Source: Podarcis cretensis (taxonomy: Eukaryota). Taken from it: a stretch of DNA of 64,000 nt. The position numbers and the translations under genes were made by a program. The stretch's first letter is position 1, and the number at the start of each line of letters is the position of its first letter. The stretch lies in contig OX638152.1 in NCBI GenBank assembly GCA_951804945.1, forward strand, positions 97,588,001 to 97,652,000, read 5' to 3'. A model generated the notes under the pieces. That model ran no database searches and was not told the DNA's origin. It saw nothing but the letters and a program-made list of their open reading frames with translations. This document shows positions 12,201 to 63,425 of the stretch, piece by piece.

Positions 12201-15200
12201 CATTCGGCAAATATTTCATACCCATTTTGAGCAGGGTAATGAAGTGCGGCACATCTCCCTTTTCTCGTCACCAAGATATGGGCAGCGACATCATCACAAG
12301 GCCAGGAGGAAAGAGACCCTGGGATTCAAGAGTCTATGATGATGCTGCAGTAGCAGGGGAAATCCCAGGAAAAACCCAACAGTACCCACCCAAAGTACTA
12401 TAATCCTAAAAGATTATCATAGCTGCCTCCCCCCACGACCAACACCCATAGTTGCAAAAAGGGTATCGCTTGTTCTGATGCCTGATTGACATTACCTCCT
12501 ACATTCCTCACAAATAACTTAATACACTAGTTTATGCATGCACAACTGCCTTCGGAGCTTCTATACCGGCAGGACAGAATTTTATTCTGTAATTTCAGGT
12601 GGTGAGAATGGCTCCAATTGTAACTAAAAGCTGTTTTGACAGAAGAGTCAAAACAGAAATCTGTTCCTAGGCTCCTGTGCCATATAAGGCTTTGAGTTAA
12701 GATCTAAATGATAAAGATGATGTGATCTTTGGAAAGAGAAAATTGCACAGCCACCAAATACTCTGCTAAGCAACAAACCATAGACGAGGGCCTCGCTTTC
12801 CTTGCCTGGCAAATATTTTTCACAAGAAAGCTGTGGAACCGTGTCCAAATGCAAAAAAGAAGAAGTTCAAAGCAAACTAGAAGCTACTGTAAAAAGCGAA
12901 TCTTGTTCCAGATTTTTCCAGACTCGAGGTCTGGCTTTCTTAAACGGCACAACATAAAATATAGGAAGGGAAAGGAGATACTGAAAAACTTCTTTGCGGG
13001 GCATGAAAATGGATTTGAATCTCTATACCACTTGAGGGGAAGCCTTGTAACCTCTGACCCTTTTCCTGACAGAGAATGTAAAGTTTGCCCCCCTCTAACG
13101 TGGGAGAGTGTGGGAATTTCGCTTGCCTCTATTTGCGATTGTGTCGGGCGGCGGGGGGAGCACGGCCCAGACTGCCGTCTGGAAACAATAAAGGCTGGCG
13201 AGCTGTTCAGTTGGTTACTAATAAGTTGGTAGCTTGTCTTCAGCCCCTTTTAGTCCCACTGCATAAAGGCCCAGTTCTCTAAATTAAATTCTATCCAGGA
13301 GTAGGATTTAATAACTTCATTATGCTTATTGGAAAAGTTAAGTTTCCGATCCCTATTATCAAACAATTCAGCTGTGTTAAAAAAAAAACAAACAAGAAAA
13401 ACGACACTTGTTTTTAAAAAAACAACAGCAACCCAAATGTGAAACAGAGCCTGCAAAAGCAGTCTAATTTTAACAACCCATTTAAATGAAAATAGGACAC
13501 AGGACACTGGCAGATTCTTCCACAGACGCTGTAGTGAAATGAAAGGGTTCTTAGCCATTGTGTAACTCGCGTTCATTTCTGAAGGAGCATCACCTCAGTT
13601 TGCTGTGCTTTTTTATTTCTAATGGTAACTCAGTGGTTTGCTAACTAGATTGAAAATCTAGTGTCTGGTTTAAATATGTATGTCTGTATTTTTATGTAAC
13701 TGGTATTAAAATGCACACATAAGATTCATTGGATTTTAATCTTCCCTTTTCAGGTGGATGAAGTAATGCTCACTCTGAAACAAGCGTTCAGCACGGCTGC
13801 AGCCCTCCAGAGTGCCAAGACTCAGATTAAGCTCTGTGAGGCCTGCCCAATGCACTCTCTGCACAAGCTCTGCGAAAGGATTGAAGGTAGTTGTGAGCCC
13901 TTGCTTGCTTTCTGAATCTGGAGCATTGTGCTTTGCACACAAAGGTGCCACGGGGCTTTGTTTTGCAGTAAGTCAAGCTTGTTTGCTTAGGGTGCCATGC
14001 TAAGTCTTCCAGTGTCCATAAACACCTGGTTAAGGCTGTAATTTATGTTAGATTGCCTTGCGTATACCATAACTGTGAGGGAATATAACTTAACTACCTG
14101 GACCCTGAGATCATCTTCTGAGGCCCTTCCTGTGCCTCCTCGGTGCCAGAGAGTGGCAACACGAGAACGGGGCCTTCTCTGCAGTGGCTCCCCATCTGTG
14201 GAATGCTCTCCCCAGGGAAGTTCACCTGGCGCCTTCATTACACACCTTTAGGTGCCAGGCACAAACCTTCCTTTTTAACCAGGCCTTTGGATGATCTGAT
14301 TTACATCCAATGCTCTTTTAAAATGTGTTTTTTTGCGGGGGCCACTATTGGGTTGTTGTTTTTATTTTTATTATGTATTTTGTGGTTTTATGTCTTGATT
14401 TTATTCTGTGAACCACCCTGGGACTTCCGGGTATAGGGCAGTTTATAAATTCAAACAACAACAACAACAACAACTTTTCTTGTGGATATTTGGTTCTGTA
14501 TCAAGAAGGCCCACCCACCTATTATAGGCCCCTTTCCTGTTATAAGGTTATAGGATTCCTGACACAGCCATAAATAGGACATGTGCCAGATTGTCGCCTT
14601 TTAAAGGAAAGGAAGAGGGGATACCTTGAACTATTTGAACCCTATCCAGAAGAAGAGCTCTGCAAAATCAGACCAAGGTCTAGCGAATCCGTTCAGTAAT
14701 TGTGTTTCCATTGGTGGCTAGAGAGGTTATTTTGCAAAACCCACACAACAGTTAATGAAGACAACAGCTTGCTCCCTACAGACCACCCAGTGGTGCCTCA
14801 GAAGTCAAACGGAATCCGTTCCGGAAGTCCGTTCAACTTCCAAAACGTTTGGAAACCAAGGCATGGCTTCTGATTGGAACGTTCGCAAACCGGAACACTC
14901 ACTTCCGGGTTTGCGGCATTTGGGAGCCAAAACGTTGGACTCACAAGGCATTCGGGATCCAAGGTCCAATTGTGTTTGGTATTCTACCCTGGCTGGTCAT
15001 TCCACCTGAACAGTGCTATTTTCCTATATATTTGTAAAGGCTCATCCATACTTCCTTTTGTGCTGTATTTCTAGGCATGGTTCTAGTATTGTTGTTTTTG
15101 TCTTGGTGCTTTCCCCAGGAAAACCCTCATTTTAACACTGAGAGAAAAAATGCCCCGGTGCATCCATAACAGCAAAACTGGGCACCTTCCTCAGCCCCAC

Positions 15201-17086
15201 CTGCAACAAAACCTGTCTCTCCCGTATCGGTCTCTACAGTGCTGTAACTCCAATGGTTTGACCACCCCCAAAGGCGCATTTATATATGGTCTCCTGAACA
15301 GGCGGGTGCCAGCATACATACCACCGAATCAGGGCAAATGGCAGCCAGTGGGCAACCCTATCGCCGTTTACTCTGATTCAGCGGCGAAACACGGGTTTCC
15401 CCGAGGGAAGCACAACATGGACCCTGTGCCTGGAAAGTGCAGAGCAAAAGGAAGTCTAAATGAGCCCTAACTCATCCTGGGCAACATTTTCCATCAAAAG
15501 GATGACTCACACATTTTAAGAACGCGACGTGGAAACCTTATTCAGAATAGAGGCCGTTGGAAGCTAGTCACTATACTGACAGCATGACAAGGCTACCCAC
15601 ATGGTACTCCCCCCTCCCCCCAGCCCAAAATAAAGCTTACTTTCTTCTATGCTGGCATGTGTTTATAGCAGAAGTACATATTTAGTTGTCAGCTCCCTCT
15701 GGTGGGCAGAGAAGAGTGCCAAGTCTGCGCAAGTGCAGCCCGTGACTTAAGCTGATGTTTTCTTGAAGAAAAGAAAGAGCTTTGTCTGGGGCAGGGGGCG
15801 GGTTGGCAGGTTCTGGAAGGGTGTATGTAGGACCTATAATCACCTCTCTCGAGAATGACTGACTGATTGAACGCTCAAACTGAAATCCTGCGGGAGGCCT
15901 GGGTTTTGAAATGGGAACGTCTTTCCTTGGCCTTAAGAGAGAGGAGGGGGGGAAACCCCACTGCTGAGTTAGGATTCTGCCCTTGAGCAAGAAAAATGCA
16001 CACAAACAACAACAACAACAACAACAACAACTTTGCATTGATTTAGCTACGCCAGCAGCTTAAAGAAGATTTCTATCACATGTGGTGGGTGGGTATTTAT
16101 TTATTTAAAAAAAGAACTGCTATATCTTGGGAGACTGTGCTTCGGTCAATAGAGGCATTCCAGGTGAAAGAAGGTGCCAGACCTGGTGGTATGCTCATTA
16201 AATTTTGTTAAATATTGGGTACCAGTGAAGGGAAAAGCCCACTTCATAGTGCCAAGAGGCTCTCGGAGCAGCCGAGAAAAAGTTTCTCAAACAAAATCTC
16301 TATTAAAATGTGGCACACAAACAGAAATCACATGGTGCTCGTATGAAGGAGGCAGTTCTGGCTGCCATCCTAATATTGTCTCTGGTGTCATATCAACTCC
16401 CTCTCGAATCCTCTGAGGCAAGGCAGTGCATCTGAGAAGATGGATCTCACTTGGCACATGGCAGAGGCCATCTTCTCTTGCATCTATAAAGGAGGGCCCC
16501 CATAAGATCTTTAAGTCCAGTGCCCAAAACCACATAATCACATCACTGATGGTGGTTCTATTTACCCGCTTGCTTGTTTGAGACCCGCCTCTCCCTTTCC
16601 ATAAATTAAGAATGCAATAAGACTGAATTTGTAAAAGCTGTGGAGCAGAAACTTTTGTTTTTAGCATAAAATCTGGGTTTTCTTGACATTGTCATGACTT
16701 AATATACTGCACATTATTCAGTGTTAATGTTCTACAACAAGTATGGTGAGATGGTTTGTCAAATAAATATAACTTACCTCATCAATGTCTGCCTGCCTCT
16801 CTGTTGTTTTTTAAGGTCTTTATCCACCAAGAGCTAAACTTGTGATTCAGAAACATCTGTCCTCTCTCAGTGACAATGAGCAAGCTGACATCTTTGAGCG
16901 TGTGCAGGTAATAAACCAAACCAGTTGACATTCATTCTCTGGAACGGGACTACAGGATCCAGTTGTTAGCTCAGAGACACCAAGAATCAAAAGTACATTC
17001 ACAAATGTACTCCGAAGGCTATTGTTAAACAGCTGTAAGCTGCCCAGAATGACTGGGAAAACCCAGCCAGATGGGCGGGGTATAAA

Positions 17087-17133
<47 letters not shown>

Positions 17134-20100
17134 TGTAATGAAATTAATTTATTTTGATACTTTATTTCTAGAAGAATGAATTGTCTATTGTTCTATAAAA
17201 ATCAAGTTGAACCAGAATTGCAGATATCAAATTTCCAAAAATATATTGCTTATTTCCCACCTAACAGAAAATGAAGCCCGTTACTGACCAGGAAGACAAT
17301 GAGCTGGTGATCTTACACTTGCGACAACTGTGTGAAGCTAAACAAAAGGCTCACGTGCATATTGGAGAGGCCCCAATGGTAAGACTCTTTATCCTGTTTT
17401 GTCGTTTAGTGATGGCGGAAGACATCTTAGAATATGAACCCAAGTGCTTCTGTTGGATGGTTTCCCATCTTAGCTCCTTCTCCGGGGCTGCAGCATACAT
17501 CTGAGCATACATTTAGCTTAGTCCCAATGAAATCCCTCTGAGTTAATGTATAGTCAGGCTAGTAAACTATGGCACTTTGTGGCAGTGGTTTCCAAAGGGC
17601 AATTATGTGTTGTGCCAATCAGTTTCATTGGGTGACCCCAAGCTCTAGCCTTGTGAGAGAGGTGGGAAACTCTAGCCTTGGGGTGGGAGTTGCAAGTTGA
17701 TTTCGTTTTCAGAATAAGGAAGACAGTGAATGATAAGTACCATAGTGTAGAAATTACTGAGCGACCATCTTGAGCATCACAAGAATAGCTTCCTTTAATG
17801 ATAAACCGCCTCTTGATTGAAATATTGTTAAGGCAGCAGTTAAGTTAAAAACTACTATGAAACAAAACTTGGTTATAAAACCCAGCAAAAGTTAACTATG
17901 CCAGAGCAGTTAAACCAGGCTTCCTCAACCTTGGTCCTCCAGATGTTTTGAGACTACTGTTCCCAGCATCCCTGACCACTGGTCCTTCTAGCTAGGGATC
18001 ATGGGAGTTGTAGGCCAAAAACATATGGAGGGCCGAGGTTGAGGAAGCCTGAGTTAAACTAAAGCCCTAGTCAGTATTCTTTGCTCCTGTGTTGACAGAA
18101 GTCCCACCCACAACTTCCCCCCCAAATGGTTTTAATGTGAATGCATGTAGCAAGGGAGCCATGAGCCTTCATATTCATGCATGGAGACTTCCTGGAATCT
18201 GAAACCCTGGCTTTGCTTTCAGCGAATGAATGGCCAATGGGACCTTCTGATTTGCTTTGGGGATGCAGTACACAAAAAAAGGGGTCACTACTCCCCTGTG
18301 GCCAAGCCACAATCCAAATTGATTATAGCAACAACACCAAGAAGTCAGCGATGAATTTTGCAGCCCTGATGTTGCATCTAGTTTGACCTGGTTTCCTTAA
18401 AGTGAGATGGGCGCACAACCCCAGAGTCTGTCAAGACTGGCCCGTACGGGCAGGGGTACCTTTACCTTTACCTATATCTGTGGGTCAGTTTGGCAGGGTT
18501 GTCTTCTGTAGGCTTTGGGTTGTCTTCTGTAGGCAACATTGATGACAAAGCTTGCCTTTTTGTTTCAGCAGAATGCCTCCAACACCACAGTTCCAGAGAA
18601 CGCAGCTAGTGGTGGCAGATTCAAACTTGACATTCTGAAAAACAAGGCTAAGAAATCTTTGACCAGCTCTCTGGAAAACATTTTCTCAAGGGTAAGTTGC
18701 TCAGGAGCGAGGCCTCCTGGGATGTAATTGTCCATAAGATCATTGTAACCTTTTAGATATTTGATTACCTTCTTCGGTGACAAATTCTACCTTCTTGGGC
18801 CTATTCTTTTTTGCACCCCTCTCTTGAAAACTGAAATTTGTGTTGAATTGTACAGATCACCAATAAATCATTAAGTTGTCCTTGCAACAACTACTACAGA
18901 AATAAGAATTAATTTCAGTATGGCAAATGGTGGTCTGTTGGGAGTGCTGGTATTTTGCCTGTTGTGAATGTATTGTGCTTCTCTATTTATTTATATCACA
19001 AAATTTATACATTACTTGGTAGCTTTTTTTAAAAAAAAAAGTGGTTTACAAAAAGATAAAACTAATAGACCAGATTTTTTTTTACAATACATTAAAACTT
19101 GCAAGAAGTTTAAACGCTAAAACAGATTAAAATTCACACCAGCTTTTCTAAGCATCTGGGTAGACTTGACTAAACTTCCAAGTTATAAAAAGGTTGATAA
19201 AATAATTGGCTTGGCACAAGTTAATACCAGTTAAAACTTGGTTAAAATCATGTGATCTGCAGAGCTCTGGAGCCAACTTTCTGAGCTGACGCCATCTTAA
19301 CCAGAAGTCACTAGAGATTTGACTTGACTAAAGAGGAATGTTTTTAGTGGATTCAGAAAAGAGTTCAGTGAAGCTGCCTGCTTGATATCAATAGGCAGGG
19401 AGTTCAAAAGTGTAGGTGCCACCACACTAAAGGATTGGGTTCTAACAAATGTGGAATGGGTGTTACGGGGCACTTGTAGCAGTGCTAATTCTGCCAGTTG
19501 AAGCAATCGAGTAGGGCACATAAGGGGTAAGGCAATCTCATAGGTACACAAGTCCAAAGTTGTTAATGGCTTTAAATGCTAACTTTAAATACTAACTGGG
19601 CCTTGAACTTGGCCTGGTAGCCAATTGAACATGGGTATTCTATGCAAGGGACGCGGGTGGCGCTGTGGGTAAAACCTCAGTGCCTAGGGCTTGCCGATCG
19701 CATGGTCGGCGGTTCGAATCCCCGCGGTGGGGTGAGCTCCCGTTGCTCGGTCCCTGCTCCTGCCCACCTAGCAGTTCGAAAGCACCCTTAAGTGCAAGTA
19801 GATAAATAGGGACCGCTTTATAGCGGGAAGGTAAACGGTGTTTCCGTGTGCTGCGCTGGTGCTGGCTCGCCAGAGCAGCTTCGTCACGCTGGCCACGTGA
19901 CCCGGAAGGGTCTCCGGACAGCGCTGGCCTCCGGCCTCTTAAGTGAGATGGGCGCACAACCCTAGAGTCGGACACGACTGGCCCGTACGGGCAGGGGTAC
20001 CTTTACCTTTACCTTTTTATTCTATGCAAAGGGACGCGGGTGGCGCTGTGGTCTAAACCACAGAGCCTAGGGAAAGTCATCAGTTCGAATCCCCATGAAG

Positions 20101-21919
20101 GGGTGAGCTCCTATTGCTCTGTCCCTGCTCCTGCCCACCTAGCATTTCAAAAGCACATCAAGTAGAAGTAGATAAATAGGTACCACTCTGGTGGGAAGGT
20201 AAATGGTGTTTCCGTGCGCTGCACTGGTTTGCCAGAAGCAGCTTAGTCATGCTGGCCACATGACCCGGAAAAACTGTCTGCGGACAAACGCCGGCTCCCT
20301 TGGCCTATAGAGCAAGATGAGCGCGCAACCCCAGAGTCGTCCATGACTGGACCTAACAGTCAGGGGGTACCTTTACCTTTATTCTATGCAAACAAGGGCT
20401 CACTCCTGTCAGCAGTCAGCACCATGCGCTAACTAACTGAGTTATACAGAGGCAGCACTCTGCTTTAACTGCCTCTTCTGGATCAAGCACAAGGAAGTCC
20501 CTCATAGAGCACGTATTGAGTGTGTCATTTAACATCTGCATGTTTTGATATTATTATCAAATAGGTATTAAGAATTTTTAGGAGGTTTAGTGGCATAAGT
20601 TGTATAATGCATGGCTTGAAGCTGCATATTTTAACATGAGTAGCTTGGACAGTAAATCACTTTGTATGTAGGTCAGATTTGAAAGTTAAAATTAACTTGG
20701 CACAGTGCCTTCTGGAATTCCGTTGTTTCCGAACGTGGTTGCTGATGGGTCACATAGTCTTAGAGCCTTGCATTCAGATTCCCTCTCTTGCTTACTTAAT
20801 TAGGCACCTTGGGAGAAGATAGCATGGTATTGAAAGCAACAAACATGAGGACACCTCAAGAGCAGAAATTGGGGGTGCGTTTTGTTTGGTGAAGGACAGT
20901 CTCACTCAAACTAGAACTTTTGATTGATTGATGGCAAGCATGTATGTTGCAGTTCAGTAAATATAACATGGAAATCAAACCGAAAGGCAGGGTTGACCCT
21001 GAATTTTAGATTTGTTGTTTAATAAGCAATATATGGCCCTGGGCAGCAACTAGCTTTGCAGAAGTGCCATTTTGTGAGGAGATTAAAAGTGGTAGAAGAT
21101 GAACAACAGGCCAAGCCTACCATGCAACGAGACACCCAAAATGTATTTAGTTTCAAAAATAAACAAAAGTTGAGGCTTCCACAGTTGCAAGCTCATATCT
21201 CAAGTGCTGAGATATGAGAGGTAAGGGGTTGTCTGGCAAAAATTGTTTCCAGTTGACTGAATAAATACAACCTATTAAACTCCAGGTTTCATAAGTATAG
21301 CATATTTCTCCTGTCTTCAAAGCATGCCATACTCTGTTTAGGGTAGCTTATGAAGTCAGCACATTTTTTTGAACATTGAAAGGAAATCTTGATGCTTTCC
21401 TGAAGCAAAATCCTGAGCCTCTTAAGAATTTCATTTATATCTCCTGCTGTTTTGCTGCCAGATAAATATTTGCTTCCCTTAACAAGAGTTCTGTTCAACA
21501 GGCCTTAGTAGGTATAGCACCAATGCTCAGTTACCTTGCAAGGTTAATGACAAATGGAGGCGTCATCATTAAGGGCCACTTCTGATATGTCTAACAATCA
21601 AACTCAATTTTGGGATGAAAGCACAATGGCATCCAAGTTCGCACACATGGCTGTGGAGGGTGGGATTTGCATGTGTCCCACACGTTCCTACCATTCCTAC
21701 CCAGATGTTCCTGATTGCCTACTGAAGTTCACACAGCCCTCTGTACTAAGCCCCATGGCTTGAATCCTGTGCTTCACTCCCATTCACAGTTGCTTTTGAG
21801 GCAACAGGATCCCGCTGGCAAAAAGAGAGAAGGCAGCTTCATTAATTACTCTTCCTGCACCTTCTATGCTGTTTTGGGTGCAGTGTTAGAAACTCAGATC
21901 TATTAACTAGGCACCAAAT

Positions 21920-35649: not shown

Positions 35650-38252
35650 ATCTAGGGCTTAGGTTTTTCTTCTTGCACTTTTAGGGCAACCAGGAAAATT
35701 GGATGTGTGGTCTTGTGTAATTCAGAGTAATACAGAGAGAGATAAGCAACATCATAGTCAACCCAGGATTAAAACTGATAGGAATCTTTCAGCCTTAGGA
35801 CACATTAGTGAAAGGTGTAAGCATCTGAGCCGCTCTTTTCTATTCATGGGGTGGGTGTGTTTTCATTTTCAGCTAACATCAGTGAGTACATACACAGGCT
35901 GAGGCGTGAATTTCCCTTTTAGTTTTCTGCTTTCCTTCAAAGGAAAGGAGAAGTTGAACTGAAAGCAAAGCTGGGAGACAATGCAGATTTTTCATATGCT
36001 GCAGCCCTAAAGATTTACTTTTGGGTGAGTTACGGCTTGCGGGTTAAAATTCAAAAACGCTCCATTTGTGAACAAAATAAGGGAAATTATCTTTGAAAGA
36101 CGGTTGTGGAACTGTGCTACCAAGAAATCTAGGGCTTGTTGCTCTTGTCACTTAGGAAATCCCCTGCATTTATTTGGAGAAGCTCAATGCTTATGCTGAT
36201 GAAGGAATAGAAAAGGGCTTTTGTAATTACAGTGTGGTTTTGGAACCAGATCGTTCTAAAAGAACCTCTTTTTCCTGTCAACATTTGCAAAAGTAGAGGC
36301 AAACTTCACAGGATCTCACAGCTGGCTAATAGGAGACTGGGTTCATGGCCAACCAGGTAGTTTTAAGTGTTTTGCTAATTTCTTTCTGATGTTTCACAAC
36401 TTAGCAGCAGCTTAAGAGTGAAAATACAAAGTGAGAAACTGAACTTTGGTTTTCTTTGCAGTTTTGATTTGGTTCCTTTTATCCTGCTTTGTCTCTCAGA
36501 AGGTGCATTAAAACTTAGCTTTAGTATGGGTTAATGGAAGCCCTTTTTATTTGTGTGGGAACTGTGGTGTGTGCTTGTGAGAGCAATCTCTAAAAGGACT
36601 CGGTGGGAGCTTCAATGTAGGGGCTTTTTAAATTAAAATGTAGGGAAACAATAAGCACATTTCTCTTTCAGAAGGCAGTCTTACTTGCATTTGTTGTTTA
36701 GTCATTTAGTCGTGTCCGACTCTTCATGACCACCTGGACCAGAGCACGCCAGGCACTCCTGTCTTCCACTGCCTCCCGCAGTTTGGTCAGACTCATGTTT
36801 GTAGCTTCGAGAACACTGTCCAACCATCTAATCCTCTGTCATCCCCTTCTCCTTCTGCCCTCCATCTTTCCCAACATCAAGGTCTTTTCCAGGGAGTCTT
36901 CTCTTCTCATGAGGTGTCCAAAGTATTGGAGCCTCAGCTTCACGACCTGTCCTTCCAGTGAGCACTCAGGGCTGAATTCCTTCAGAATGGATAGGTTTGA
37001 TCTTCTTGCGGTCCATGGGACTCTCAAGAGTCTCCTCCAGCACCAGAATTCAAAAGCATCAATTCTTCGGCGATCAGCCTTCTTGATGGTCCAGCTCTCA
37101 TATATTTGCTTCACTCTAAAGCTGCTGTTACACTTTACAAGCAAAAGTTAGTAGTACTACTCCCCCCCCCCCAGAAACTGATCTTGCTAAGCTCTAGGGG
37201 ATTTTGCCATTTCTTGTTGAAACCATTTTTTTTAAAAACCTAGCGAAGACTTGCATTTGCTACCTGCTCAGAAAACTAGGTTACTTGGGATCAGAAAAAT
37301 TAAAGGGCTACGGGAAGACATATTGCACAGGATTCATTGATCTGAGCTCAGTTTTTGCACAACTAAAGTAGGGAGCATCTATGGCTATCCCGTTTAGAAT
37401 TTAACATTTTAGTGATGAGTGTGGGGGCCACAAAAGAAGTCGAAATAGTTCTTTCTTGGTGCATTATTTATATAAAAGGTATCTCACGCCCACTTGCTAT
37501 GTATTTAAAATATTTCAGATTGTCAAATAAGGGCATTCTACATACTTTTGATTCGTCACAATAATGCAATGCATTTTGAGAGAGTTTAGAGGGTTTTCTC
37601 CGAAAATCCATGTGTTTCTCCTTTTTATGGCTCTAGTTTCTTCCTCTTTTGTAGTTCAGTCTTTGTAATTCTGTGTTTGACTATATTCACTCTTCATTAG
37701 TCTAGAATACATCAGTCTGATTTTTAACTCTATCACAGCAGCCAAACTCTTTTAATTATATCTGCATTGCTTTTATGTACTGATCTTGTACTGTTAGCTT
37801 TAACTATTAAGTAGAATATTAATGTAATGTTACATTAGTGGAGGTTAAAAAAATAGTTGCACATTCTGTTTAGCTTAGAAATGTGGCACATTAAAGATCC
37901 TTTTTGAGGTGCTGGCAGAAAATACTCTTTGGTTCTTAGCTAATGCTTACATAAGAGAGCAAAGGTCTTTAGACATCTTTCTTTCTTTCGTTTAATATGA
38001 TGGGACTTGCTTTTATTCAGTTTCATTCTTTGTCATGGTGTTTTACTACTTGTTATGCTGTACAAAATCATCTCCTGAAACTCTTTCTTGTCTACGAATT
38101 TCAGGTTCTAGAATATTTCAGTCATGATTCTTTAAAGCACACACAAAGGCCCAGGAATTAAGAATTTAACAATTGGCGGCTGTTCTGGTCAACTTCACGA
38201 TGAAGAAAAACTGCTTTCTAACCCATTCACTGGACTTATAATGTATCTATTT

Positions 38253-45100: not shown

Positions 45101-48100
45101 GTGCAATTTATTCCTGCCCGTACACCCTCTTTGCTTACTCATCATCAGATGAAATTTGTTGACAAAATACTAATAAAAATACTTCCTATTCTTCTTAATG
45201 CTGTCGAGGAAGCTTGAATTATATTTTCTTTTATAGAAGGTAAGATGCACGTAAGCAAAATGTTTTCTTCCCCTCCTTATATGTAACTCACTATTGGAAG
45301 CACTGCAGTAGTAGAATAGCACTAAATCTTTCGCAGTTTGAGTGATGGAATTGTAGCTTTACTTCTTGCATGTGCTGCTTCCATCTATTCAACCGCCATG
45401 TTCTTTGCAACTCCACCAAATCTAGTGATTAGCTTTAGGACAGGATAATCACATTGTGAACCATACAGTGGAATTCAGATCATCTGCAGAAGGAGCTTGT
45501 GTACCAGGCTGGCTCAGGGGAGACAGCTGAGCGCATGTTCTCACCTTCCCACAGGTTTTAAGAAAGTCTTCTGCTATTTATTCTTGAGTCTTACCGAACT
45601 TTCTACATCTTTAGTTTAAGAACTGGTTGTACAAGGCTGTAAGTGTGCAGAGCTTTTGCACAGTAAGAGAACACTACTATGGGTAACTGCCCCCAAACAT
45701 GCCTTCCTAAACCTCGGGATGGTTGACAGGACATAACCTGATATGTGGCCTACATGGCATTAACTGCTGGTCTGTGGTCCATCATCTGAAATGGTCTGTG
45801 CCTTGTGTTCTCTCTTGCAGCAAGCAGAGATGAGCTCCAGTCCAGAAAGGTTAAGCTGGACTATGAGGAAGTTGGTACTTGTCAGAAAGACGCTATCAAT
45901 ATCTGGGATAAGAAGCTGTTGAATTGCAGAGCCAAAATCAGATGCGATATGGAAGATATCCATGCAACTCTGAAAGATGGTAATTTTGAGTGCTTTTTTT
46001 TTTTTTTTTTTTTTGAGACCTTGCATTTTTCATCTGTTTGAACACCACCATAGGCAGGGAATGAGCCTGATGCAAAGCAACGACATTTTTCTGGTGATTT
46101 TCCCTCGCTTCTGTTGCCTTGCATTTCCAGTTGAAAACTGGGAAATTATAGTCACTTTGAGTTTTGGAAAAGGAGTGGCTGACAAATAAAGATTTCTGGG
46201 CTGTACAGTAACTAGAGAAAGGGAGTGCTCCGCTTGAATTTGGGTGGAAAAGTAAACCGAAGCTCAGAAAATAGGTCTGAAAATCAGCGGCGTAGCATGG
46301 GTTGTCAGCACCCGGGGCAAGGCAAGTAATTTGCGCCCCCTAACCCAGGGCAAGGCAAGTAATTTGTGCCCCCTAACCTGGGGCAAGGCAAGTAATTTGC
46401 GCCCCTAACCCCTAACCTGCCGCCGCTGCCAGCTTCTTCTTGCTGCTGCCTGGGCTGGGGTATTTACGGTAAGGTAGCCACGGTGGCGGTGGTGGGTCTG
46501 TGTCAGGTGATCTGAGGCGAGTTGCCGCTGGCGCTGCCGCCCAAACGACGCCGCTTGCCCGGAGGAGGAGGAGGGCAGAGAGGCGAGGAAAATGCAACAT
46601 GGCCCAGCAGCTGCAGCAGTAGCGGCGGCGGGGCTGTGAGGAGGGGCTGCCTGGCGCGGCCTCCACGGCCCCGATGCGCAGGGACCACGGCAAGCGCTGA
46701 GAGCCGCTGCCTGCCGGACGCCTTCAGCCCGGACGTGCGCACAGCTCGTCGGTTCCACAAGACATGGGACTCTGCTACAGCCTGCGCCCGAGGCTCTTCG
46801 GCGGCTCCAGAGGCGGCGAGCGCACCCCCCCCAGATGTTGCGCCCGGTGCGGCCGGCCCCCCCTGCACCCCCCACGCTACGCCACTGCTGAAAATTCTGA
46901 GGCTCCTGGAGAATGTCACTGGGCCAGCAAACGGATCCCATTTTTTTGCCCCATTACGAGGCTGCAATAAATGAGATGTTGAAAGTGTTCATGTGGAACA
47001 GAGTGTGTAGAAGTTCAAAATAATGACCCTAATGGTTATAAATTAGAAATGGGTAATCTTTATATTTGTAGTGAACTCTATTAAACCACCCCACAATCCC
47101 CTGAATAATTTTGTTTTATATCTTCGTGTCTTCAGGTGTTCCCAAAAGTCGCCGGGGAGAAATATGGCAGTTTCTTGCCGTGCAGCATCGCGTAAGGCAC
47201 CGGCTACCAAATAAACAGCAACCCCCTGATATCTCTTACAAAGAACTCCTGAAACAGTTGACAGCTCAGCAACATGCGATCCTTGTAGACCTAGGTAACT
47301 TTTTTTCCATAGTCAGGACTTTAGGTCATGAACAGGTTGGAGGTGGAGGTGTGTGGGGGGGCGGGGGAGGGGACTTGTTCCAAGTTAATCTGGTTCTGCA
47401 GATTGTATAAATTGTACAAGTACCAGGGTAACGCCTCTTTATTTTGTATAAATTCATTTTTGTTTTGCTAGCCACTGGGTAAAGAACGATGTGAGCACTG
47501 AAGACTTGCTTTTTCTCTATTGAAGTCTTATTCAGCCACCCGCTCTGGTTTCTGGAACGTTAGGTGGCACTATCTGTAAACATGCATATTTTAGCCACGA
47601 GGCTTAGAAATCTGACGTTCAACAAAGAAAAGAGGTTTTTTGGGAACCTGAATTTTGTGCCTAGTGTTCAGTTCTGTACTTCTTCTGTGCCACCCAAATC
47701 TTGCAGCCTGCTTACATTTATTGTTTTATGGCTGCCAGTTGTTATGCCTGGAAAATGCCCCCAGTAATAAGCACCCCATTTTTCATTTGCTTAGGATGGT
47801 TGATTTTCACACTTCTCGTGATCATGGGCTCAGGAGTAGCAGCACAGTGTAAGGAACCAAGAGAGAGAGAGAGGCTTCCTAGTCCTGCCAAGAGACGAAA
47901 GAGAAGTTTAACATTCTGTTGCTATTGGATAATGGGGTGGTAGTCAATGAAGGTTTACTCAGAGTAGACCCATTGAAAATAACAAACATGATTAAGTTAG
48001 GTCCATTGATTTCAATGGGTTTGCTCTGAGTGAAACTTAGTTCTACCCAGACACTGAGGTCCAGCTCTGAGGGCCTTCTGGCGGTTCCCTCACTGTGAGA

Positions 48101-48559: not shown

Positions 48560-51500
48560 CCAGGGAGGACCTTCCCAACACATCCTTACTTCTCTGCTCA
48601 ATTAGGAGCAGGGCAACTCTCCCTCTTCAATCTTCTGAAAGCTTATTCCTTGCTGGACAAGGAGGTGGGCTACTGCCAAGGTATCAGCTTTGTAGCTGGG
48701 GTGCTGCTCCTCCACATGAGTGAAGAACAAGCCTTTGAAATGCTCAAATTCCTCATGTACGACCTCGGCTTCCGGAAGCAGTACAGGCCGGACATGATGT
48801 CACTACAGGTAAGGCAGAAATAGGCTTCTGCTTGGGAGAAAGATGTTACACTGGGAGTTGGGGGCAGCACTGCAGAAGGCTCATGAACTAAATGTGGCCT
48901 GCCACCTGGTTCCCTTTGGTTTCTGATCTCTCGTCGTACTCAGAACAACCTCTCTTACCACCGTTTCCTGTATTGTCCCTTAAAAGTTCCCATTGGCTTG
49001 TTGGGCATCTCCCTTCCCTATGTTTTTCTCAACCACCTCAGCAGTTTACACTGAAGTGAAGGACATAAGGCAGGAGTTGATAATGCAGGTGAGCTGCGCA
49101 CAGGTCAGCTGCAAGCAAGCTGCCAGCCAGCTCTGTGGAGGCTCCTTTTATTGACACAATATGCAAACCCAGGCAGATAGATTTTGGGCTGTGACCTTTA
49201 CACATCTTCCGGTCTCGAGATCGTGGGGTGGTACAAAGTTATTTTGGAGCCTGTTTCCACCGTGTCATTTTCCCCTTGCACAATGTATGACGAAGGAGAC
49301 AAAGGTTTCAGACAGGACATGGCAGACTACTGAGATCGCAAAAGGTTAGACAGAGGGCAAGATGTTCAAACAGCTATGACTATCTGTGAGGGGGAGTGTG
49401 CCCCGCACCCCAAGGTAACGCGTGCAGGCAGCTGAGGCTGCCTGCGGGCGGGGAGATTGCTCCATACCCAGCGATCATTCCTACATACACTACTATTCAC
49501 CGCATACTCTGCTGGCAAATATTCTGCTGCTCCATGACTTTATTAGGTACCTTCAGTGGAAGCGATGAATGAGAGGAACACGGTGTTAGAAGCTAGCTCG
49601 CTTTTTGGCCGGGTTTCATCCTCGCTCAACTTGTTGCAGCGGCAAAGTGAGAGGCCTGCAGTTAGAAACTTGGATCCCAGGAAGCAGCTTATAAAGTCAA
49701 GAAGCATGCATAGAGCCGAGCTGCTGATGTAGCAAACTATTCCCTCCCTCAGAAATAGTGTCTTTCTTTAAGTGTAAACCTCTGTTGGCAAAGTAATAAG
49801 ACGTGGCAGCTGATCAATATCTCCCTGCTTTTCATTTCTCAATTTTGAGGGAGAGCTGTGCAGATCCCTCCCTCCTCTGGTTGGAATTCCTAAGACAAAT
49901 TCCAGAGTGCTAGTTCACAGGAGAGTACTCTGTTTCAACATAGTTTATCAGTTAGAGTAAGGGACAAACAACACATTATTTGGGAGATCTGTGATCATTT
50001 TCTAGCTTAGAAAAACCAACCTGAAATACAACCTTGGGTGCTGCGAATCTGAAAAGCTGCCTGCATTAGTGACTGTGACCACTTCTTATGGCAGTGAATT
50101 CTAGCTATGCGCATATACACATGTGGCCACACCTTCTGGACAGACCAAGCATCATGTGAACAGCAGCCACAGGGAGAGGGGACCCAAACAGCCTCAGGGT
50201 TTCCTCCTGAGGAAACTGTGATAGCAGGTACGAATTGCACAAGAAGTCAGAGAAATTCTTAATCTGAGCCAGTGTGGTGTAGTGGTTCAGAGCGGTGCAC
50301 TCGTAATCTGGTGAACCGGGTTTGCGTCTCCACTCCTCCACATGCAGCTGCTGGGTGACCTTGGGCCAGTCAAACTTCTCTGATGTCTCTCGGCCCCACT
50401 CACCTCACAGAGTGTTTGTTGTGGGGAAGGAAGGGAAAGGAGAATGTTAGCCGCTTTGAGACTCCTTCGGGTAGTGATAAAGCGGGATATCAAATCCAAA
50501 CTACTCCTCCTCCTCCTCCTCCTCCTCCTCCTCCTCCTCCTCCTCCTCCTCCTCCTCCTCTTCTTCTTCTTCTTCTTCACTCTCCCATATTTTAATACAG
50601 ATCCAGATGTACCAGCTGTCGAGGCTACTGCATGATTATCACAGAGACCTCTACAACCACCTTGAAGAGAACGAGATCAGCCCCAGCCTTTATGCTGCCC
50701 CCTGGTTTCTGACTTTATTTGCTTCGCAGTTTCCATTGGGATTTGTAGCCAGAGTGTTCGGTAGGAAGCTTTTCTATGTATTGGTTGGGCAGATCAATAA
50801 TAGGCCCCTCCAAATTGGTGGTTTCATTGGGGGGGGTGGTTCCTATTCCGCAACATGCCTTTGACATAATCATAGTGCCTTTAGTGACAGATTTATACCA
50901 GACCAGCCACATTTTATTCTGCTTTACGCTGGCTAACATACATTGGCTTATTTGACATCAGCTTCTCATGTGTAAGAACAGTTCCCTAATTTGTGTGTGT
51001 ATGTAACAAAACATCATTTTGAGTAGTTTGGGCACTCCTTCTGCACTAGAACAATTGTTTAAGACTTCTTTTTTCCTGAAACTAATCCTTCTGCAGGAAT
51101 TTTTTAAAAGTGTATTGCAGGAACACAATTTACATTTCATTAGATCTTGGGCTATGGTGATGGTTCACTGATGCTAACCAAGCCATGTGTTGTGCTTGGA
51201 TTTTACTTGAGAAGACACGACACATTTTCTTGACTTGGAATACTAAAGCATTTGTGATGTATATGTTAATTATAAAACATGTTTTTAACAGATAAGTGTA
51301 AGAACACAAAAAAATGACTTTTTTATCCCCTTGAATCTTCAACATAAATATGTATAGAAAACAACGTTTTAAATGGGAAACACAATCTAATCTATGTTTT
51401 GTTCTCTGCCCTAGACATTATATTTCTTCAGGGAACAGAAGTCATATTTAAAGTAGCACTAAGTTTGCTAAGCAGCCAAGAGGAACACATCATGATGTGC

Positions 51501-54500
51501 GAGGCTTTTGAAAGCATCGTCGAGTTTCTGAAAAACACTCTACCAGACATGACAAAGCTCCAAATGGAAAAGATTATGACGCAGGTAATAGTCTGTTCCA
51601 CCCCCACACAAACAGTATAATGCATTGATAATGCATCACTTGGCCATTCAGTTATATGATAGTGCCTAAAGAACTGAGCTGTGAACCAAAAGGCCCTGGC
51701 TTGAACCTCGCTTCTCCCATAAATTCACCAGGTGGCTTGAGGGAAGCCGCTGTCTAGGATACAGGGAATAATATCTGGCCTTCCTTACAGGGTTTTTTTG
51801 TAAGGATTACTGAGCTGATGTACAGGAAGCACTCTGTAAAGTTCACTCTTGTTCTAATGAGAAATATTAGGTTGTAATCCCGACGCTGTGAGTCATATTC
51901 CTCATACCCTGGCTCTTTCAGTTTCCACCTCAAGCCAGCAGACTGGGTGCTTGCTGTGAACCATTTCATGTACATGCTGTTAGTGCCTTTGACACCATCC
52001 TGGGAGTGCAAAGCTCTGGTGTGAAGCCATCTTTAAGGAGTTGGCTGGTTAGCTTATATCTGGGCGAATGGAGGAGACTGAAAACTCTGTTCTGTGAAGG
52101 ACTAACTGAAGAGAGCACTCTCTGTGGGTCAGTGCTATAACTTTATTTTGGAGTTTCAAGATATTGCCATATTCGAGGTATTTTTTAAATGAATGTTTAA
52201 AGAACATTTTAACTGAACAGGGTAAAAGAAAAGGTATACTACATCATTATAGAAGTGAGCAATTCCAATTACATATATGCCTATCTAATGTATAGGCATT
52301 ATTATTATCATACATGTATATTTTTAGCCTGCTGTATTTTGTATAAATGTTTTACAAATGGCAAAGGTTAACAGCAAAATACATTTTAAACAAATGCATA
52401 CTTGCAGCATCCTCCAAATGTCATCGGAATATATCACAAATGTGTGTGCGTTTTAAAAAATGTACATGTGCAATTACAAATGTGTGTGTGGTTGGTTGCT
52501 TGGGTGGGTGTTTGGACAACTCTGGGGTTGCGGCGCTCATCTCGCTCTATAGGCCGAGGGAGCCAGCGTTTGTCCGCAGATAGCTGACAGCTTCCGGGTC
52601 ATGTGGCCAGCATGACTAAGCCGCTTCTGGCGAACCAGAGCAGCGCATGGAAACACTGTTTACCTTCCCACCAGTGCAGCACCTATTTATCTACTTGCAC
52701 TTTGAGGTGCTTTCAAACTGCTAGGTGGGCAGGAGCTGGGACCAAGAAACAGGAGCTCACCCTGTCGCGGGGATTCAAACCGCCGACCTTCTGTTCGGCA
52801 AGCCCTAGGCTCTGTGGTTTAACCCACAGTGCCACCCTAGTCCCTGTACTTAGCTGCTAATCCTTGAAACTTCTTTGAGTTAGCATGTTGGCAAAAGGTC
52901 AAGAAAATTCCCCAGCTATCTTACTGACATTAGTCTCTGCCTCTGGTAAGATTCATCTATTTATTGGCCTGTCCAGAAAGTGTGTTAATGTAGCCACATC
53001 AACCCAAGTTGCACAGGTTCCACCAAACGTCAGTTTGGAACATGCATGCTGCTGATTCCTCAAGATTGCCATCTTTCAGGCTCATTATCCAGAAGCAGCT
53101 TCTAGTCTTGAGAGTCATCCCTTCTGGGGGAGAAGTGTGAACACCTCCTTGACTCATGTAACCAGTTGGATGAGGCATCCTCGTAGGCATGCTTTGTTTA
53201 TAGTTCATATGGTCCTATTTGCCTGAATTAAACACGGTGGGACCTCTCATAAGGAAACTGGTTTTCTTTTCTTTTTTACACACATTACAAATTACACACA
53301 TATACAAAGAATTTACAATCTCATACTACAAAAAGAAAATTAAAGAAAAAACAATAAAGAAAAGAAGTCATTACAGAAAAAAGAAAGAAGAAAAAGCAGA
53401 TTTATGTGCATAAAAAAACTTAATCTTCCTAATTAATGCTTAAATAAGCACTTAAATAAAAAAGACTTCTGACAAAACAAGTCTTCCAATCATTCTCATT
53501 GTACTGTTTATACCGTCGTTTTTCCCGCACAGTTTTATATTCTTTAATATTGTTCCCATCTACTCCACAAACGGTATTCATTGTGTTTACAAGTATCACT
53601 CAAGTTCTGCTAATATGGTGTGCTTGGTACAATATGATCTCGTATAATCCTTAAATATTCTCCAAATCTTTTCTCTTCTGTCGGTAGGTCTTTGAGATGG
53701 ATATTTCCAAACAGCTGCACGCCTATGAGGTGGAGTACCACGTTCTGCAAGATGAACTGCAAGAGAACTCAAATCTCTGCGATGATGGGGAAGCTCCCGA
53801 GAAACTCGAAAGGGCAAACAATCAGCTGAAGAGGCAGAATATGGACCTCCTGGAGAAACTACAGGTAAACTACCAAGGAACAAGCTGCATGTTGTGACTT
53901 TATTGCATGTTGTGACTTTATTGCAGAACCAGTGTGGCACATGGGGTTGGCCTAGGAAACCTAATAGGTCCGTTCAGGCTCTCTGATTCTCTAAATGTTT
54001 AGCAGAAGACCCAGGTCTGGGCTAAACTAAAGGAGAAACATCAGGAGCGGGTACTTGACGCCCTCCTATATTCCAGCCTCTCTTCCTCAGAGGAAAACTC
54101 CCAGTCCTTTGTTTGGTGGCTGCGGAAGAGGATTATGGAGGAAGAGTGAGCCGCTCCTGCCAACAGTTCTCTTCAAATTCCATCCTCTCCCGTTTTTTTT
54201 TACACATTTGTCAAACATCTAGATCTGATGGTGAAAGCTTTGTTTGGTCTTCAGGTTCATTGAGGTAGGATAGGAAAACACACCAGGTTGTATCCATCCA
54301 TGCCAGAGTAGAAGGGCCATAGCCCAGTGGGAGAGCATTTCCTTTGTGTGCAGAAGGTCCCAGGTGCATCCCCAGGGAGGGCTGAGAGGAACTTATTTCT
54401 GCCTGAAACCCTGGAGAAATGCTTCCAGTCAGTGTAGACAATATGGAGCTGGGTAGACACTGTGATAGTAGAGAGGCGGGTGGCGCTGTGGGTTAAACCA

Positions 54501-62354: not shown

Positions 62355-63425
62355 ACAAACCTGAAGCTTTTCTTTTAGGAATTATAGAGACAGAAGTCCC
62401 CCAAAAGATGATTGAGTTATTTATGTACGTTACAACTGCAGCTAGGATTCTCTACACACACAAAATGGAAAGAAGCAGAAATAGCCACTGAAGAAGAATC
62501 AATAAGCAAAGCGATGGATCACGCAGAACTGACAAAGTTAAGAGATTTTACTTTCTTGGGCTTCATGATCACTGCAGATGGTGACAGCAGTCACGAAATT
62601 AAAAGACGCCTGCTTCTTGGGAGAAAAGCAATGACAAACCTAGACAGCATCTTAAAAAGCAGAGACATCACTTTGCCAACAAAGGTCCGTATTCTTAAAG
62701 CTATGGTTTTCCCAGTAGTGATGTATGGAAGTGAGAGCTGGACCATGAAGAAGGCTGATCGCCGAAGAATTGATGCTTTTGAATTATGGTACTGGAGGAG
62801 ACTCTTGAGAGTCCCATGGACTGCAAGAAGATCAAACCTATCCATTCTTAAGGAAATCAGCCCTGAGTGCTCACTGGAAGGACAGATCCTGAAGCTGAGG
62901 CTCCAATACTTTGGCCACCTCATGAGAAGAGAAGACTCCCTGGAAAAGACCCTAATGTTGGGAAAGATGGAGGGCACAAGGAGAAGGGGACGACAGAGGA
63001 CGAGATGGTCGGACAGTGTTCTCGAAGCTACAAACATGGGTTTGACCAAACTGCGGGAGGCAGTGGAAGACAGGAGCACCTGGCGTGCTCTGGTCCAGGG
63101 GGTCATGAAGAGTCGGACACGACTAAATGACTAAACAACAACAAAAAAGAAGAAGAGAACCTAATGACGAAGGTTTTTTTGGAAGAACCCTTTCCGGATT
63201 ATTTAAAGAAATATTATTGTATGACGAACACCCTAGCAGGATTTGAACTATGAGCAACAGAAGGGATTAAAGATTAGAATAGTTTTGTTAAGGTTTAAGA
63301 GAGAGAAGATGGTGACGCAGAAAAAAACAGAAACATCATGGAAAAGGGGATGGGAAGTCTTAAAAAAGAAGATGATTTTATTATGTATTGAAATACATGT
63401 GTGAATTTTGGACAACTTAATAAAA
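62355..63425 (+). mobile_element. L1/Tx1-clade 3' fragment interrupted by Bov-B
   Basis: KPEAFLLG...MYVTTAARIL before the Bov-B; DYLKKY after it. Confidence 0.7.
62541..63143 (+). mobile_element. Bov-B (RTE) LINE 3' fragment, open frame
   Basis: DFTFLGFMITADGDSSHEIKRRLLLGRKAMTNLDSILKSRDITLPTKV...; (CAA)n tail. Confidence 0.92.

What the first reader, a model, noticed from the sequence alone, without database searches (positions are those of the whole stretch)
46285..46887. Candidate Pack-hAT: a non-autonomous DNA transposon carrying the start of the GNAL XL exon, inside a TBC1D4 intron
Seen: 12-bp TIRs, a perfect 8-bp TSD (the hAT signature), subterminal repeats, no transposase and a very GC/CpG-rich interior in an otherwise AT-rich intron. 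At 46764 the interior reads ATG GGA CTC TGC TAC AGC CTG CGC CCG AGG CTC TTC GGC GGC = [14 protein letters not shown], then runs into the right-hand transposon end at ~46820. Recalled: the extra-long Galpha-olf isoform begins [14 protein letters not shown]. Inference: the element captured the CpG-island 5'UTR and start of GNAL-XL and moved it here. Such capture is well known for plant Pack-MULEs and much less documented in reptiles. The intact TSD and retained CpGs point to a recent insertion, so the family may be dispersing promoter/5'UTR fragments through the genome.
Basis: partly seen in the sequence, partly recalled or inferred. Interest (0 to 1): 0.85.

Follow-up and report, generated by a model that had tools for sequence, protein, structure and literature searches.

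The report
High-copy hAT transposon, gene-like insert
The 603-base non-autonomous hAT transposon in a TBC1D4 intron is real, but its GC-rich "captured" interior is shared by many copies in several related lizard genomes, so it belongs to an old amplified family rather than being a fresh gene capture, and its proposed origin from GNAL could not be tested here.

Summary
Window 46285-46887 is a 603-bp element with 17-nt terminal inverted repeats (15/17), a perfect 8-bp target-site duplication (CTGAAAAT), a 33-bp x3 subterminal array, no transposase, and an interior that is 69% GC. That interior carries an ATG reading [14 protein letters not shown]. The element lies in a TBC1D4 intron, about 250 bp upstream of a TBC-domain exon.

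Public contigs of three related organisms show the whole element, interior and ATG segment included, as a very abundant repeat:
- About 8,000-21,000 contigs were laid per run.
- Interior word depth is 10^3-10^4 times that of the unique flank.
- More than 100 contigs per run break exactly at 46285 and 46887 into unrelated flanks.

This copy is not recent. It has lost at least 15 CpGs relative to the family majority, and the right junction is bridged in a second species.

So any capture happened once, long ago, and was followed by mass amplification.

The GNAL-XL identity rests on recall only; no tool reached a GNAL sequence. One Podarcis muralis gene model (MDFI-domain protein) starts in an antisense copy of the interior.

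First readers noted other Pack-type hAT elements elsewhere in this genome; those notes are unchecked.

The parts
46277..46284 (.). Left copy of the 8-bp target-site duplication, CTGAAAAT. It fits the nTnnnnAn target pattern known for Ac-type hAT elements.
   Evidence: The pattern itself is from established knowledge of the hAT superfamily.
46285..46301 (+). Left terminal inverted repeat (core 12 nt CAGCGGCGTAGC).
   Evidence: In one search, 121-171 contigs per DNA run break here into unrelated flanks.
46310..46417 (+). Subterminal array: a 33-bp unit x3.1, each unit containing ATTTGCGCCCCCTAACCC, ending in telomere-like (CCCCTAA)2.3. It is the likely transposase-binding region. The first unit also belongs to the roughly 125-bp short form of the family.
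   Evidence: The joint 46346->46828 is seen in 20-26 contigs per run.
46418..46815 (+). GC/CpG-rich interior specific to the long subfamily. It is gene-5'-end-like and a candidate old capture of a host CpG island. It is itself high-copy.
   Evidence: In one search, summed word depth is 3e4-1e6 against 12-70 in the unique flank, and 22-99 distinct contigs per run carry the listed majority variants at interior positions.
46764..46805 (+). ATG plus 14 codons, [14 protein letters not shown]. The family majority reads ...FGD. It has an N-terminal MGxxxS lipidation-type pattern. This is the segment recalled as the start of XL-G-alpha-olf. The ORF runs on to 46970, through the right end into the intron.
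   Evidence: The GNAL identity is recalled, not tested.
46549..46710 (-). Antisense stretch whose translation matches residues 9-63 of a Podarcis muralis MDFI-domain gene model (P0004) at 85%. A GT lies directly after 46549 on the minus strand. This suggests that a copy elsewhere serves as the first coding exon of that model.
46816..46887 (+). Right terminal region shared with other subfamilies, with the right TIR at 46871-46887.
   Evidence: In one search, other members break at 46816 and 46828 ('before'), and 91-116 contigs per DNA run break at 46887 into unrelated flanks.
46888..46895 (.). Right copy of the target-site duplication, CTGAAAAT.
47135..47296 (+). Context: the next TBC1D4 exon (start of the RabGAP-TBC domain), on the same strand, about 250 bp downstream of the element. 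The bounds are approximate.
   Evidence: 3qyb TBC1D4 110 bits against TBC1D1 82 bits

Best explanation
This is one copy of an abundant, MITE-like, non-autonomous hAT family of lacertid lizards. It is moved in trans by a hAT transposase encoded elsewhere.

Shown:
- The ends are precise, the TSD is 8 bp, and there is no coding capacity.
- The family has a short form of about 125 bp (both ends only) and longer forms.
- This copy belongs to a long subfamily whose roughly 400-bp GC/CpG-rich interior, including the ATG...MGLCYSLRP segment and its junctions with both ends, recurs in many copies in at least three related genomes.
- This copy has decayed at CpGs, and the right junction of the occupied site is seen in a second species.

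Inferred:
- The interior was acquired once by an ancestral element and then amplified by ordinary cut-and-paste transposition. The likely routes are template switching or gap repair, or use of a second transposon end next to a host CpG-island promoter and first exon.
- The donor was the XL first exon of GNAL. My odds for this step alone are about 0.5, because it rests on recall.
- The copies scatter CpG-island-like 5' gene ends, which can be picked up as alternative first exons, as in the P. muralis MDFI-domain gene model.

The copy in TBC1D4 is most likely a neutral intronic passenger.
For: - Anatomy: TIR, TSD, subterminal array; no transposase domain.
- Scale of the family: 21,169, 8,036 and 19,976 contigs of runs X1, X5 and X7 (three organisms, three studies) lie on the element at >=80% identity.
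- Interior depth: the bin holding the ATG (46746-46792) has summed word depth 175,859, 129,047 and 571,798. The unique flanks have about 70, 13-20 and 16-100.
- Variant letters: family-majority letters at interior positions are carried by 22-99 distinct contigs per run.
- Shared junctions: separate contigs in all three organisms span from the ATG region into the right terminal region (records 5, 6, 7, 22, 32). Record 1 spans from the repeat array into the interior. The composite structure, not only its pieces, is therefore repeated.
- True ends: 91-171 contigs per run break exactly at 46285 and 46887 into unrelated sequence.
- Short form: the joint 46346->46828 is in 20-26 contigs per run.
- Age: 15 of 20 majority-versus-window differences are CpG>TpG/CpA in this copy. 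Record 24 of organism B bridges the right junction (46835-47300). Record 17 reaches 27 nt into the left end.
- Exon use: P0004.
- Precedent: multicopy Pack-hAT elements exist in frog and alligator and favour GC-rich DNA (PMC8277862).
Against: - Summed contig depth is not a copy number (the tool's own caveat). The copy count of 10^2-10^4 is only an order of magnitude.
- Most contigs laid on the interior are short (about 100-180 nt). No second complete TIR-to-TIR long copy, and no second TSD, was read.
- No parental locus without TIRs was shown.
- The GNAL identity is recalled only. The family-majority reading (...FGDSGGG) is slightly further from the recalled human peptide at residue 14 and closer at residue 16.
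- No autonomous partner with these TIRs is known to me or noted in the scan.
- The interior could therefore be old transposon sequence rather than host sequence.
Confidence: 0.75

Rival explanations
1. One reading: a young Pack-hAT that itself captured the GNAL-XL CpG island and start codon and recently moved it here. On this view the genome holds one parental locus and at most a few TIR-flanked copies.
For: The TSD is perfect and CpG observed/expected is still 0.72-0.80. The ATG context and peptide look like a gene start.
Against: - The interior is high-copy in three organisms.
- This copy differs from the family majority at about 20 of about 480 interior positions, and 15 of these are CpG decay.
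- The right junction is present in a species whose flanks differ by about 2%.
- A perfect 8-bp TSD is expected to survive at 1-2% neutral divergence.
Confidence: 0.04
2. The interior is the family's own sequence, for instance a remnant of the 5' region of an autonomous hAT or some other non-genic source. On this view the likeness to the start of XL-G-alpha-olf is misremembered or coincidental, so the element is an ordinary internally heterogeneous MITE with no gene capture.
For: - The interior behaves as family sequence.
- No search found a G-alpha protein, and the peptide is in no searched paper.
- Internal-deletion derivatives that keep a transposase start codon are common in hAT families (established knowledge of Ac/Ds; PMC3260210, listed, not read).
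Against: - The searches could hardly have found GNAL. The length filter was 37-119 aa. In one search a 14-residue match lies near or above the E<=0.001 listing limit among 1.8e9 proteins.
- If the recalled peptide is right, 12-13 identities in 14 residues cannot be chance.
- 69% GC with CpG o/e 0.8 and a strong start context look more like a vertebrate CpG-island first exon than a transposase 5' end. That comparison is a judgement, not a test.
- Ends are 10-100 times deeper than the interior, and other members carry other interiors at the same breakpoints. This fits an acquired insert.
Confidence: 0.3
3. The interior was captured from a different host gene, for example the 5' exon of the MDFI-domain gene whose Podarcis muralis model (P0004) begins with its antisense translation.
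For: P0004 residues 9-63 match window 46710-46549 on the minus strand at 85%.
Against: - Only residues 172-249 of P0004 are an MDFI domain. The N-terminal 170 residues match no Pfam family, which would fit an over-extended ORF through a 5' UTR; that reading is my inference.
- The roughly 85% protein identity is within the range seen between ordinary family copies (6-18% nucleotide differences, table 8).
Confidence: 0.08

Closest known systems
Multicopy Pack-TIR / Pack-hAT elements of animals (Tan et al. 2021, Nat Commun, PMC8277862). One example is Pack-hAT-N8_XT in Xenopus tropicalis, which carries 291 bp of the CAPSL 5' UTR.
   Same: A non-autonomous hAT with TIRs and 8-bp TSDs around a short, GC-rich insert that resembles a gene 5' end. 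It is dispersed by repeated transposition.
   Different: - That paper found only 4 multicopy cases in 100 animal genomes. The case it details had three transposition events and five copies, and lizards are not mentioned in its text. Here the insert-bearing form is present in many more copies and in several species.
- Its defining criterion, a parental copy free of TIRs, is not shown here.
Ds-type non-autonomous elements of the Ac/Ds (hAT) family and vertebrate hAT-N MITEs.
   Same: Short TIRs, subterminal repeats, an 8-bp TSD of the nTnnnnAn type, heterogeneous interiors, and mobilisation in trans.
   Different: No autonomous partner was identified. The interior looks like a host CpG-island first exon rather than a deleted transposase gene.
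Helitron families of bats that captured the NUBPL promoter and first exon and amplified it to very many copies
   Same: A single capture of a promoter and first-exon fragment followed by mass amplification. The copies can donate first exons or promoters to host genes.
   Different: A different transposon class and mechanism: rolling-circle read-through against hAT cut-and-paste. The host is also different.
Pack-MULEs of plants.
   Same: Acquisition of GC-rich 5' gene fragments between TIRs, and chimeric transcripts.
   Different: A different superfamily (Mutator, 9-bp TSD, long TIRs). Usually low copy number per capture.

Membership tests
hAT superfamily, non-autonomous element | 8-bp target-site duplication | tested here: met
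   CTGAAAAT on both sides, 8/8
hAT superfamily, non-autonomous element | Short terminal inverted repeats (about 10-25 bp) at the exact ends | tested here: met
   17 nt at 15/17; outer 12 nt at 11/12. Hundreds of contigs break exactly at these ends.
hAT superfamily, non-autonomous element | Target-site pattern nTnnnnAn (Ac-type hAT; the pattern is recalled from the literature) | tested here: met
   CTGAAAAT has T at position 2 and A at position 7. This is one site only, so the support is weak.
hAT superfamily, non-autonomous element | An autonomous relative with the same ends that encodes a hAT transposase (BED finger, DDE, hAT dimerisation domain) | not tested
   None is in the window. None was noted by the scan for this genome. 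No vertebrate genome or repeat library is searchable with these tools.
MITE | Small (<800 bp), no coding capacity, high copy number, copies in unrelated flanks | tested here: met
   603 bp, with a short form of about 125 bp. No Pfam domain. 8,000-21,000 contigs laid per run, with unrelated flanks at both ends.
Pack-TIR (Pack-hAT), criteria of PMC8277862 | Transposon sequence with TIRs on both sides of an internal segment, plus a TSD | tested here: met
Pack-TIR (Pack-hAT), criteria of PMC8277862 | The internal segment is not transposon sequence | tested here: inconclusive
   The ends are 10-100 times deeper than the interior, and other members carry other interiors at the same breakpoints (46346/46347, 46816, 46828). 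But the interior is itself a repeat, and no repeat library could be consulted.
Pack-TIR (Pack-hAT), criteria of PMC8277862 | A parental copy elsewhere that is not flanked by the transposon | not testable with these tools
   The only candidate is a 2,897-nt contig of run X15 (organism I). Its last 431 nt match 46385-46817 with 17 differing letters and 4 gaps (about 95% alike), and it then continues for 2,466 nt unlike the right end (record 10). Its sequence cannot be retrieved, and its left part still contains the transposon's repeat unit.
Derived from GNAL XL exon 1 | Peptide and nucleotide similarity to the lizard GNAL XL first exon and 5' UTR | not testable with these tools
   - The ORF searches found no G-alpha, but their limits preclude a verdict.
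- The peptide is absent from the paper library.
- The existence of the XL isoform, with its own exon 1, is documented (PMC12408007).
- The N-terminal sequence is recalled only.

The most novel reading that the evidence does not exclude
A lacertid hAT MITE subfamily captured, once, the CpG-island 5' UTR and the first 14-18 codons of the GNAL extra-long exon. It then amplified this fragment to hundreds or thousands of copies across several lizard species, seeding the genome with CpG-island-like promoter and first-exon modules. Host genes occasionally adopt these modules, as in the Podarcis muralis MDFI-domain gene model. This would be by far the largest Pack-TIR amplification described in an animal. 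First-reader notes of other 5'-exon-carrying hAT elements in the same genome (unchecked) suggest that the hAT lineage does this repeatedly.
Probability: 0.4. Interest if true: 0.7.

Novelty: new member of a known kind. Interest (0 to 1): 0.42.

Why it matters
If the interior proves to be host-derived, this family would show that cut-and-paste transposons in a vertebrate can mass-amplify a promoter and first-exon fragment. That scale is so far associated with bat Helitrons and plant Pack-MULEs. The survey of 100 animal genomes found only four multicopy Pack-TIRs.

It would also give a concrete system, lacertid genomes with many dated copies, for asking how often dispersed CpG-island fragments become alternative promoters or first exons.

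If the interior is simply old transposon sequence, the finding is an ordinary intronic MITE. It also shows that a short peptide match inside a repeat needs a copy-number check before it is read as gene capture.

Tried and rejected
1. The search for homologous proteins with the 68-aa ORF: one candidate, none at E<=10. Only proteins of 37-119 aa were visible, so this says nothing about a roughly 450-aa G-alpha.
2. phmmer of the first 30 residues against 1.84e9 representatives: three hits, each with many matched stretches or none. I inspected P0001, which is a tandem-repeat artefact. A 14-residue match would sit near the listing threshold, so this is no verdict on GNAL.
3. Full-text searches for the peptide: nothing relevant. 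The single hit is 'MGL-Cys' chemistry.
5. Exact 24-mer scan of JGI metagenome contigs: 0 hits.
6. Rfam on 45800-47400: only a sub-threshold lncRNA match in the left flank.
7. blastn of the element against the window: no second copy in these 64 kb.
8. Empty-site test: no joint 46284->46888 among the joints listed by read laying (15 further joints were not shown). Organism B has the site occupied. Organism D could not be judged.
9. I considered padding the ORF into a longer query or alignment to get past the length filter. I rejected this as unsound, and translation through stops is not accepted.
Exons were searched one by one, by reference.
11. Scan notes gave no autonomous hAT partner.
Full report
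**What is at the coordinates.**
- The element spans 46285-46887 (603 bp).
- It is flanked by a perfect 8-bp direct repeat, CTGAAAAT, at 46277-46284 and 46888-46895.
- Its ends are inverted repeats of 17 nt (15/17). The outer 12 nt are CAGCGGCGTAGC and CAGTGGCGTAGC.
- That 12-mer occurs only at these two places in the 64-kb window. 0.14 matches are expected by chance.
- Inside the left end lies a 33-bp unit repeated 3.1 times (46310-46411). It runs into a short telomere-like (CCCCTAA)n at 46402-46417.
- The rest (46418-46815) is 69% GC with CpG observed/expected 0.80. The 2-kb flanks have about 41-44% GC and CpG o/e 0.27-0.29.
- None of the five ORFs of the element that I scanned has a Pfam domain.
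- The ORF at 46764 reads [14 protein letters not shown] and continues through the right end to a stop at 46970.
- Its ATG has G at -3 and G at +4.

**Context.**
- Stop-free stretches on the + strand at 47105-47407, 50481-50861 and 51348-51617 match the solved RabGAP domain of TBC1D4 (3qyb).
- Two of the three match it clearly better than TBC1D1. The scores are 110 against 82 bits and 91 against 61 bits. The third is a tie.
- Other exon-like stretches of the same gene lie along the + strand from about 2.6 kb to 55.3 kb.
- The element therefore sits in a TBC1D4 intron, in the gene's orientation, about 250 bp upstream of the exon that starts near 47135.
- Exons were searched singly, by reference.

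**The decisive result: the interior is not single-copy.**
- I asked which public runs hold window 45900-47300. I then laid the contigs of four runs on it at >=80% identity.
- X1 is organism A. It is the same species as the window, or the source sample itself, because a 1,071-nt contig matches 342 nt of flank without a difference.
- X5 and X7 are organisms B and D, from two other studies.
- In all three, the unique flanks have word depths of about 70, 13-20 and 16-100.
- Every bin of the element has summed depths of 3x10^4 to 6x10^6.
- The numbers of contigs laid are 21,169, 8,036 and 19,976.
- The bin that holds the ATG (46746-46792) reads 175,859, 129,047 and 571,798.
- The tool warns that summed depth is not a copy number. 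I therefore take only the order of magnitude: hundreds to thousands of copies for the interior, and ten to a hundred times more for the two ends.
- Independently of depth, the listed family-majority letters at interior positions are each carried by 22-99 distinct contigs per run.
- The composite structure itself is repeated. Different contigs in all three organisms run from the ATG region across 46816/46828 into the right terminal region (records 5, 6, 7, 22, 32). Record 1 runs from the repeat array into the interior.

**Ends and family structure.**
- At 46285, 121-171 contigs per DNA run stop matching and continue for about 250 nt into mutually unrelated sequence (consensus agreement 0.32). 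The same holds for 91-116 contigs at 46887.
- This is what many insertions of one transposon with these exact termini should give.
- The commonest deletion form joins 46346 to 46828 with a few letters between (20-26 contigs per run). It is a MITE of about 125 bp made of the two ends only.
- Another form joins 46457 to 46763 and keeps the ATG segment.
- Further members carry other sequence at the same breakpoints, shown by loose ends at 46346/46347, 46816 and 46828.
- The family is therefore modular: constant ends and variable interiors. The window copy belongs to one long subfamily.

**Age of this copy.**
- At 20 listed positions the majority of family contigs read another letter than the window. 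In 15 of these the family letter restores a CpG that the window copy has as TpG or CpA.
- This copy has thus lost roughly a quarter of its CpGs. It differs at only about 5 of about 480 other positions.
- In organism B a 1,192-nt contig covers 46835-47300, which puts 53 nt of the right end together with 413 nt of flank.
- A 327-nt contig covers 46023-46311. That is only 27 nt into the left end, just under the tool's 31-nt bridging rule.
- The flanks of organism B differ from the window by about 2% (6/289 and 8/466).
- The site was therefore occupied before these two species split. No empty-site joint was listed.
A perfect 8-bp TSD is unremarkable at this divergence.

**Is the interior a captured piece of GNAL?**
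- I could not test this.
- The XL isoform of G-alpha-olf, with its own exon 1, exists (PMC12408007). Its N-terminal sequence appears in no paper of the library.
- The word-indexed protein search sees only proteins of 37-119 aa for this query, and it found nothing.
- The exhaustive phmmer search lists only E<=0.001 among 1.8x10^9 proteins, near or above what a 14-residue match can reach. It returned only spurious multi-stretch hits; the one I inspected is a repeat artefact.
That is not independent evidence.
- If the recollection is right, 13/14 identities (12/14 for the family-majority reading, which has D at residue 14) cannot be chance. The direction would then have to be gene to transposon, since the exon is shared with mammals and the family is a lizard repeat.
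- In favour of a host origin:
  - the CpG-island-like composition;
  - the strong start context;
  - the MGxxxS lipidation-type N-terminus;
  - an interior 10-100 times rarer than the ends;
  - the report that multicopy Pack-TIRs favour GC-rich DNA (PMC8277862).
- Against:
  - no TIR-free parental locus was seen;
  - no repeat library could be consulted.
- I put the GNAL origin at about 0.5. I put any host-gene origin at about 0.6.

**A candidate source or truncated copy.**
- Five small, probably RNA-derived runs of organism I, from three studies, hold about 18% of the words.
- In X15 a single 2,897-nt contig (depth 51.5) matches 46385-46817 with 17 differing letters and 4 gaps over about 431 nt (about 95% alike). 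It carries the family-majority letters at nearly all variable positions.
- It then continues for 2,466 nt that do not resemble the right end (record 10).
- The break at 46817 coincides with the boundary where other subfamilies join the common right end. That is what a donor locus would show.
- Its other end, however, still contains 28 nt of the transposon's 33-bp unit.
- It could be the donor with a transposon end beside it (an 'end-bypass' origin). It could also be a truncated copy inside a transcript. The sequence cannot be retrieved with the tools left.

**Use by host genes.**
- The 178-aa antisense ORF found one protein among 5.8x10^9. This is P0004, UniRef A0A670JYM4, 'MyoD family inhibitor domain containing' of Podarcis muralis.
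- Its residues 9-63 match window 46710-46549 on the minus strand at 85%.
- Only residues 172-249 are an MDFI domain.
- On the minus strand a GT follows directly after 46549.
- The simplest reading is that a copy of this element, in antisense, supplies the first exon of that gene model. This fits a bidirectional CpG-island-like promoter, but it is an inference from a predicted protein.
- The hit also places the family in Podarcis.

**Comparison with what is known.**
- The element meets the tested criteria of a non-autonomous hAT and of a MITE.
- Of the criteria for a Pack-TIR in the sense of Tan et al. 2021, it meets the structural one. The parental-copy criterion was not testable, so I do not file it as a proven Pack-hAT.
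- That survey found 370 Pack-TIRs in 100 animal genomes. Of these, 208 were hAT and only four were multicopy (three in frog, one in alligator). Lizards are not mentioned in its text.
- Earlier first-reader notes on this genome list further 'Pack-type hAT' elements with 5' gene fragments (SPR exon 1, SLAIN2, a CpG-island-like first exon). They also list a young hAT MITE that carries TTAGGG repeats.
- Those notes are unchecked. The telomere-like motif in the subterminal units here fits the last of them.

**Verdict.**
- The element is an ordinary member of an abundant hAT MITE family, not a fresh capture.
- The interesting residue is that a whole subfamily carries a segment resembling a gene 5' end. 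Its host origin, GNAL or otherwise, is plausible but untested.

Noticed in passing
window 46402-46417 and each 33-bp unit at 46310-46411: The transposon's subterminal units end in CCCTAA-type telomere-like motifs, (CCCCTAA)2.3. With tens of thousands of ends per genome, this family would scatter short interstitial telomere-like repeats. This matches first-reader notes s1-832908 and s1-836673 about a hAT MITE carrying TTAGGG repeats.
   Followed up: partly
run X15 (organism I), contig record 10; window 46385-46817: A 2,897-nt contig from a probable RNA run matches the interior at about 95% and then continues for 2,466 nt unlike the right transposon end. It is either a candidate donor locus or transcript, or a truncated copy. 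Four further runs of the same organism hold a similar share of the words.
   Followed up: partly
P0004 (UniRef A0A670JYM4, Podarcis muralis); window 46549-46710, minus strand: In an annotated MDFI-domain protein, the first 63 or so residues are the antisense translation of this element's interior. The next 100 or so residues match no Pfam family. It is probably a gene model that starts in a transposon copy.
   Followed up: partly
window 50504-50560: A long trinucleotide repeat (GGA/TCC type) reads as runs of S, R, L or P in different frames. It lies directly upstream of the TBC1D4 exon that starts near 50590.
   Followed up: no
window 10590-11051, 36702-37148 and 62412-63131: Three fragments of one LINE-like repeat have closely similar ORF remnants (...[14 protein letters not shown]... 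on one strand...[14 protein letters not shown]... on the other). By recall it looks like a BovB/RTE-type element, which is common in squamates. It was not classified with a tool.
   Followed up: no
window 47208-47295: A 4,254-nt contig of run X15 matches the TBC-domain exon at only about 80% (17/88 differences). It is probably a transcript of the TBC1D4 orthologue of a more distant species, or of the paralogue TBC1D1 (record 16).
   Followed up: no
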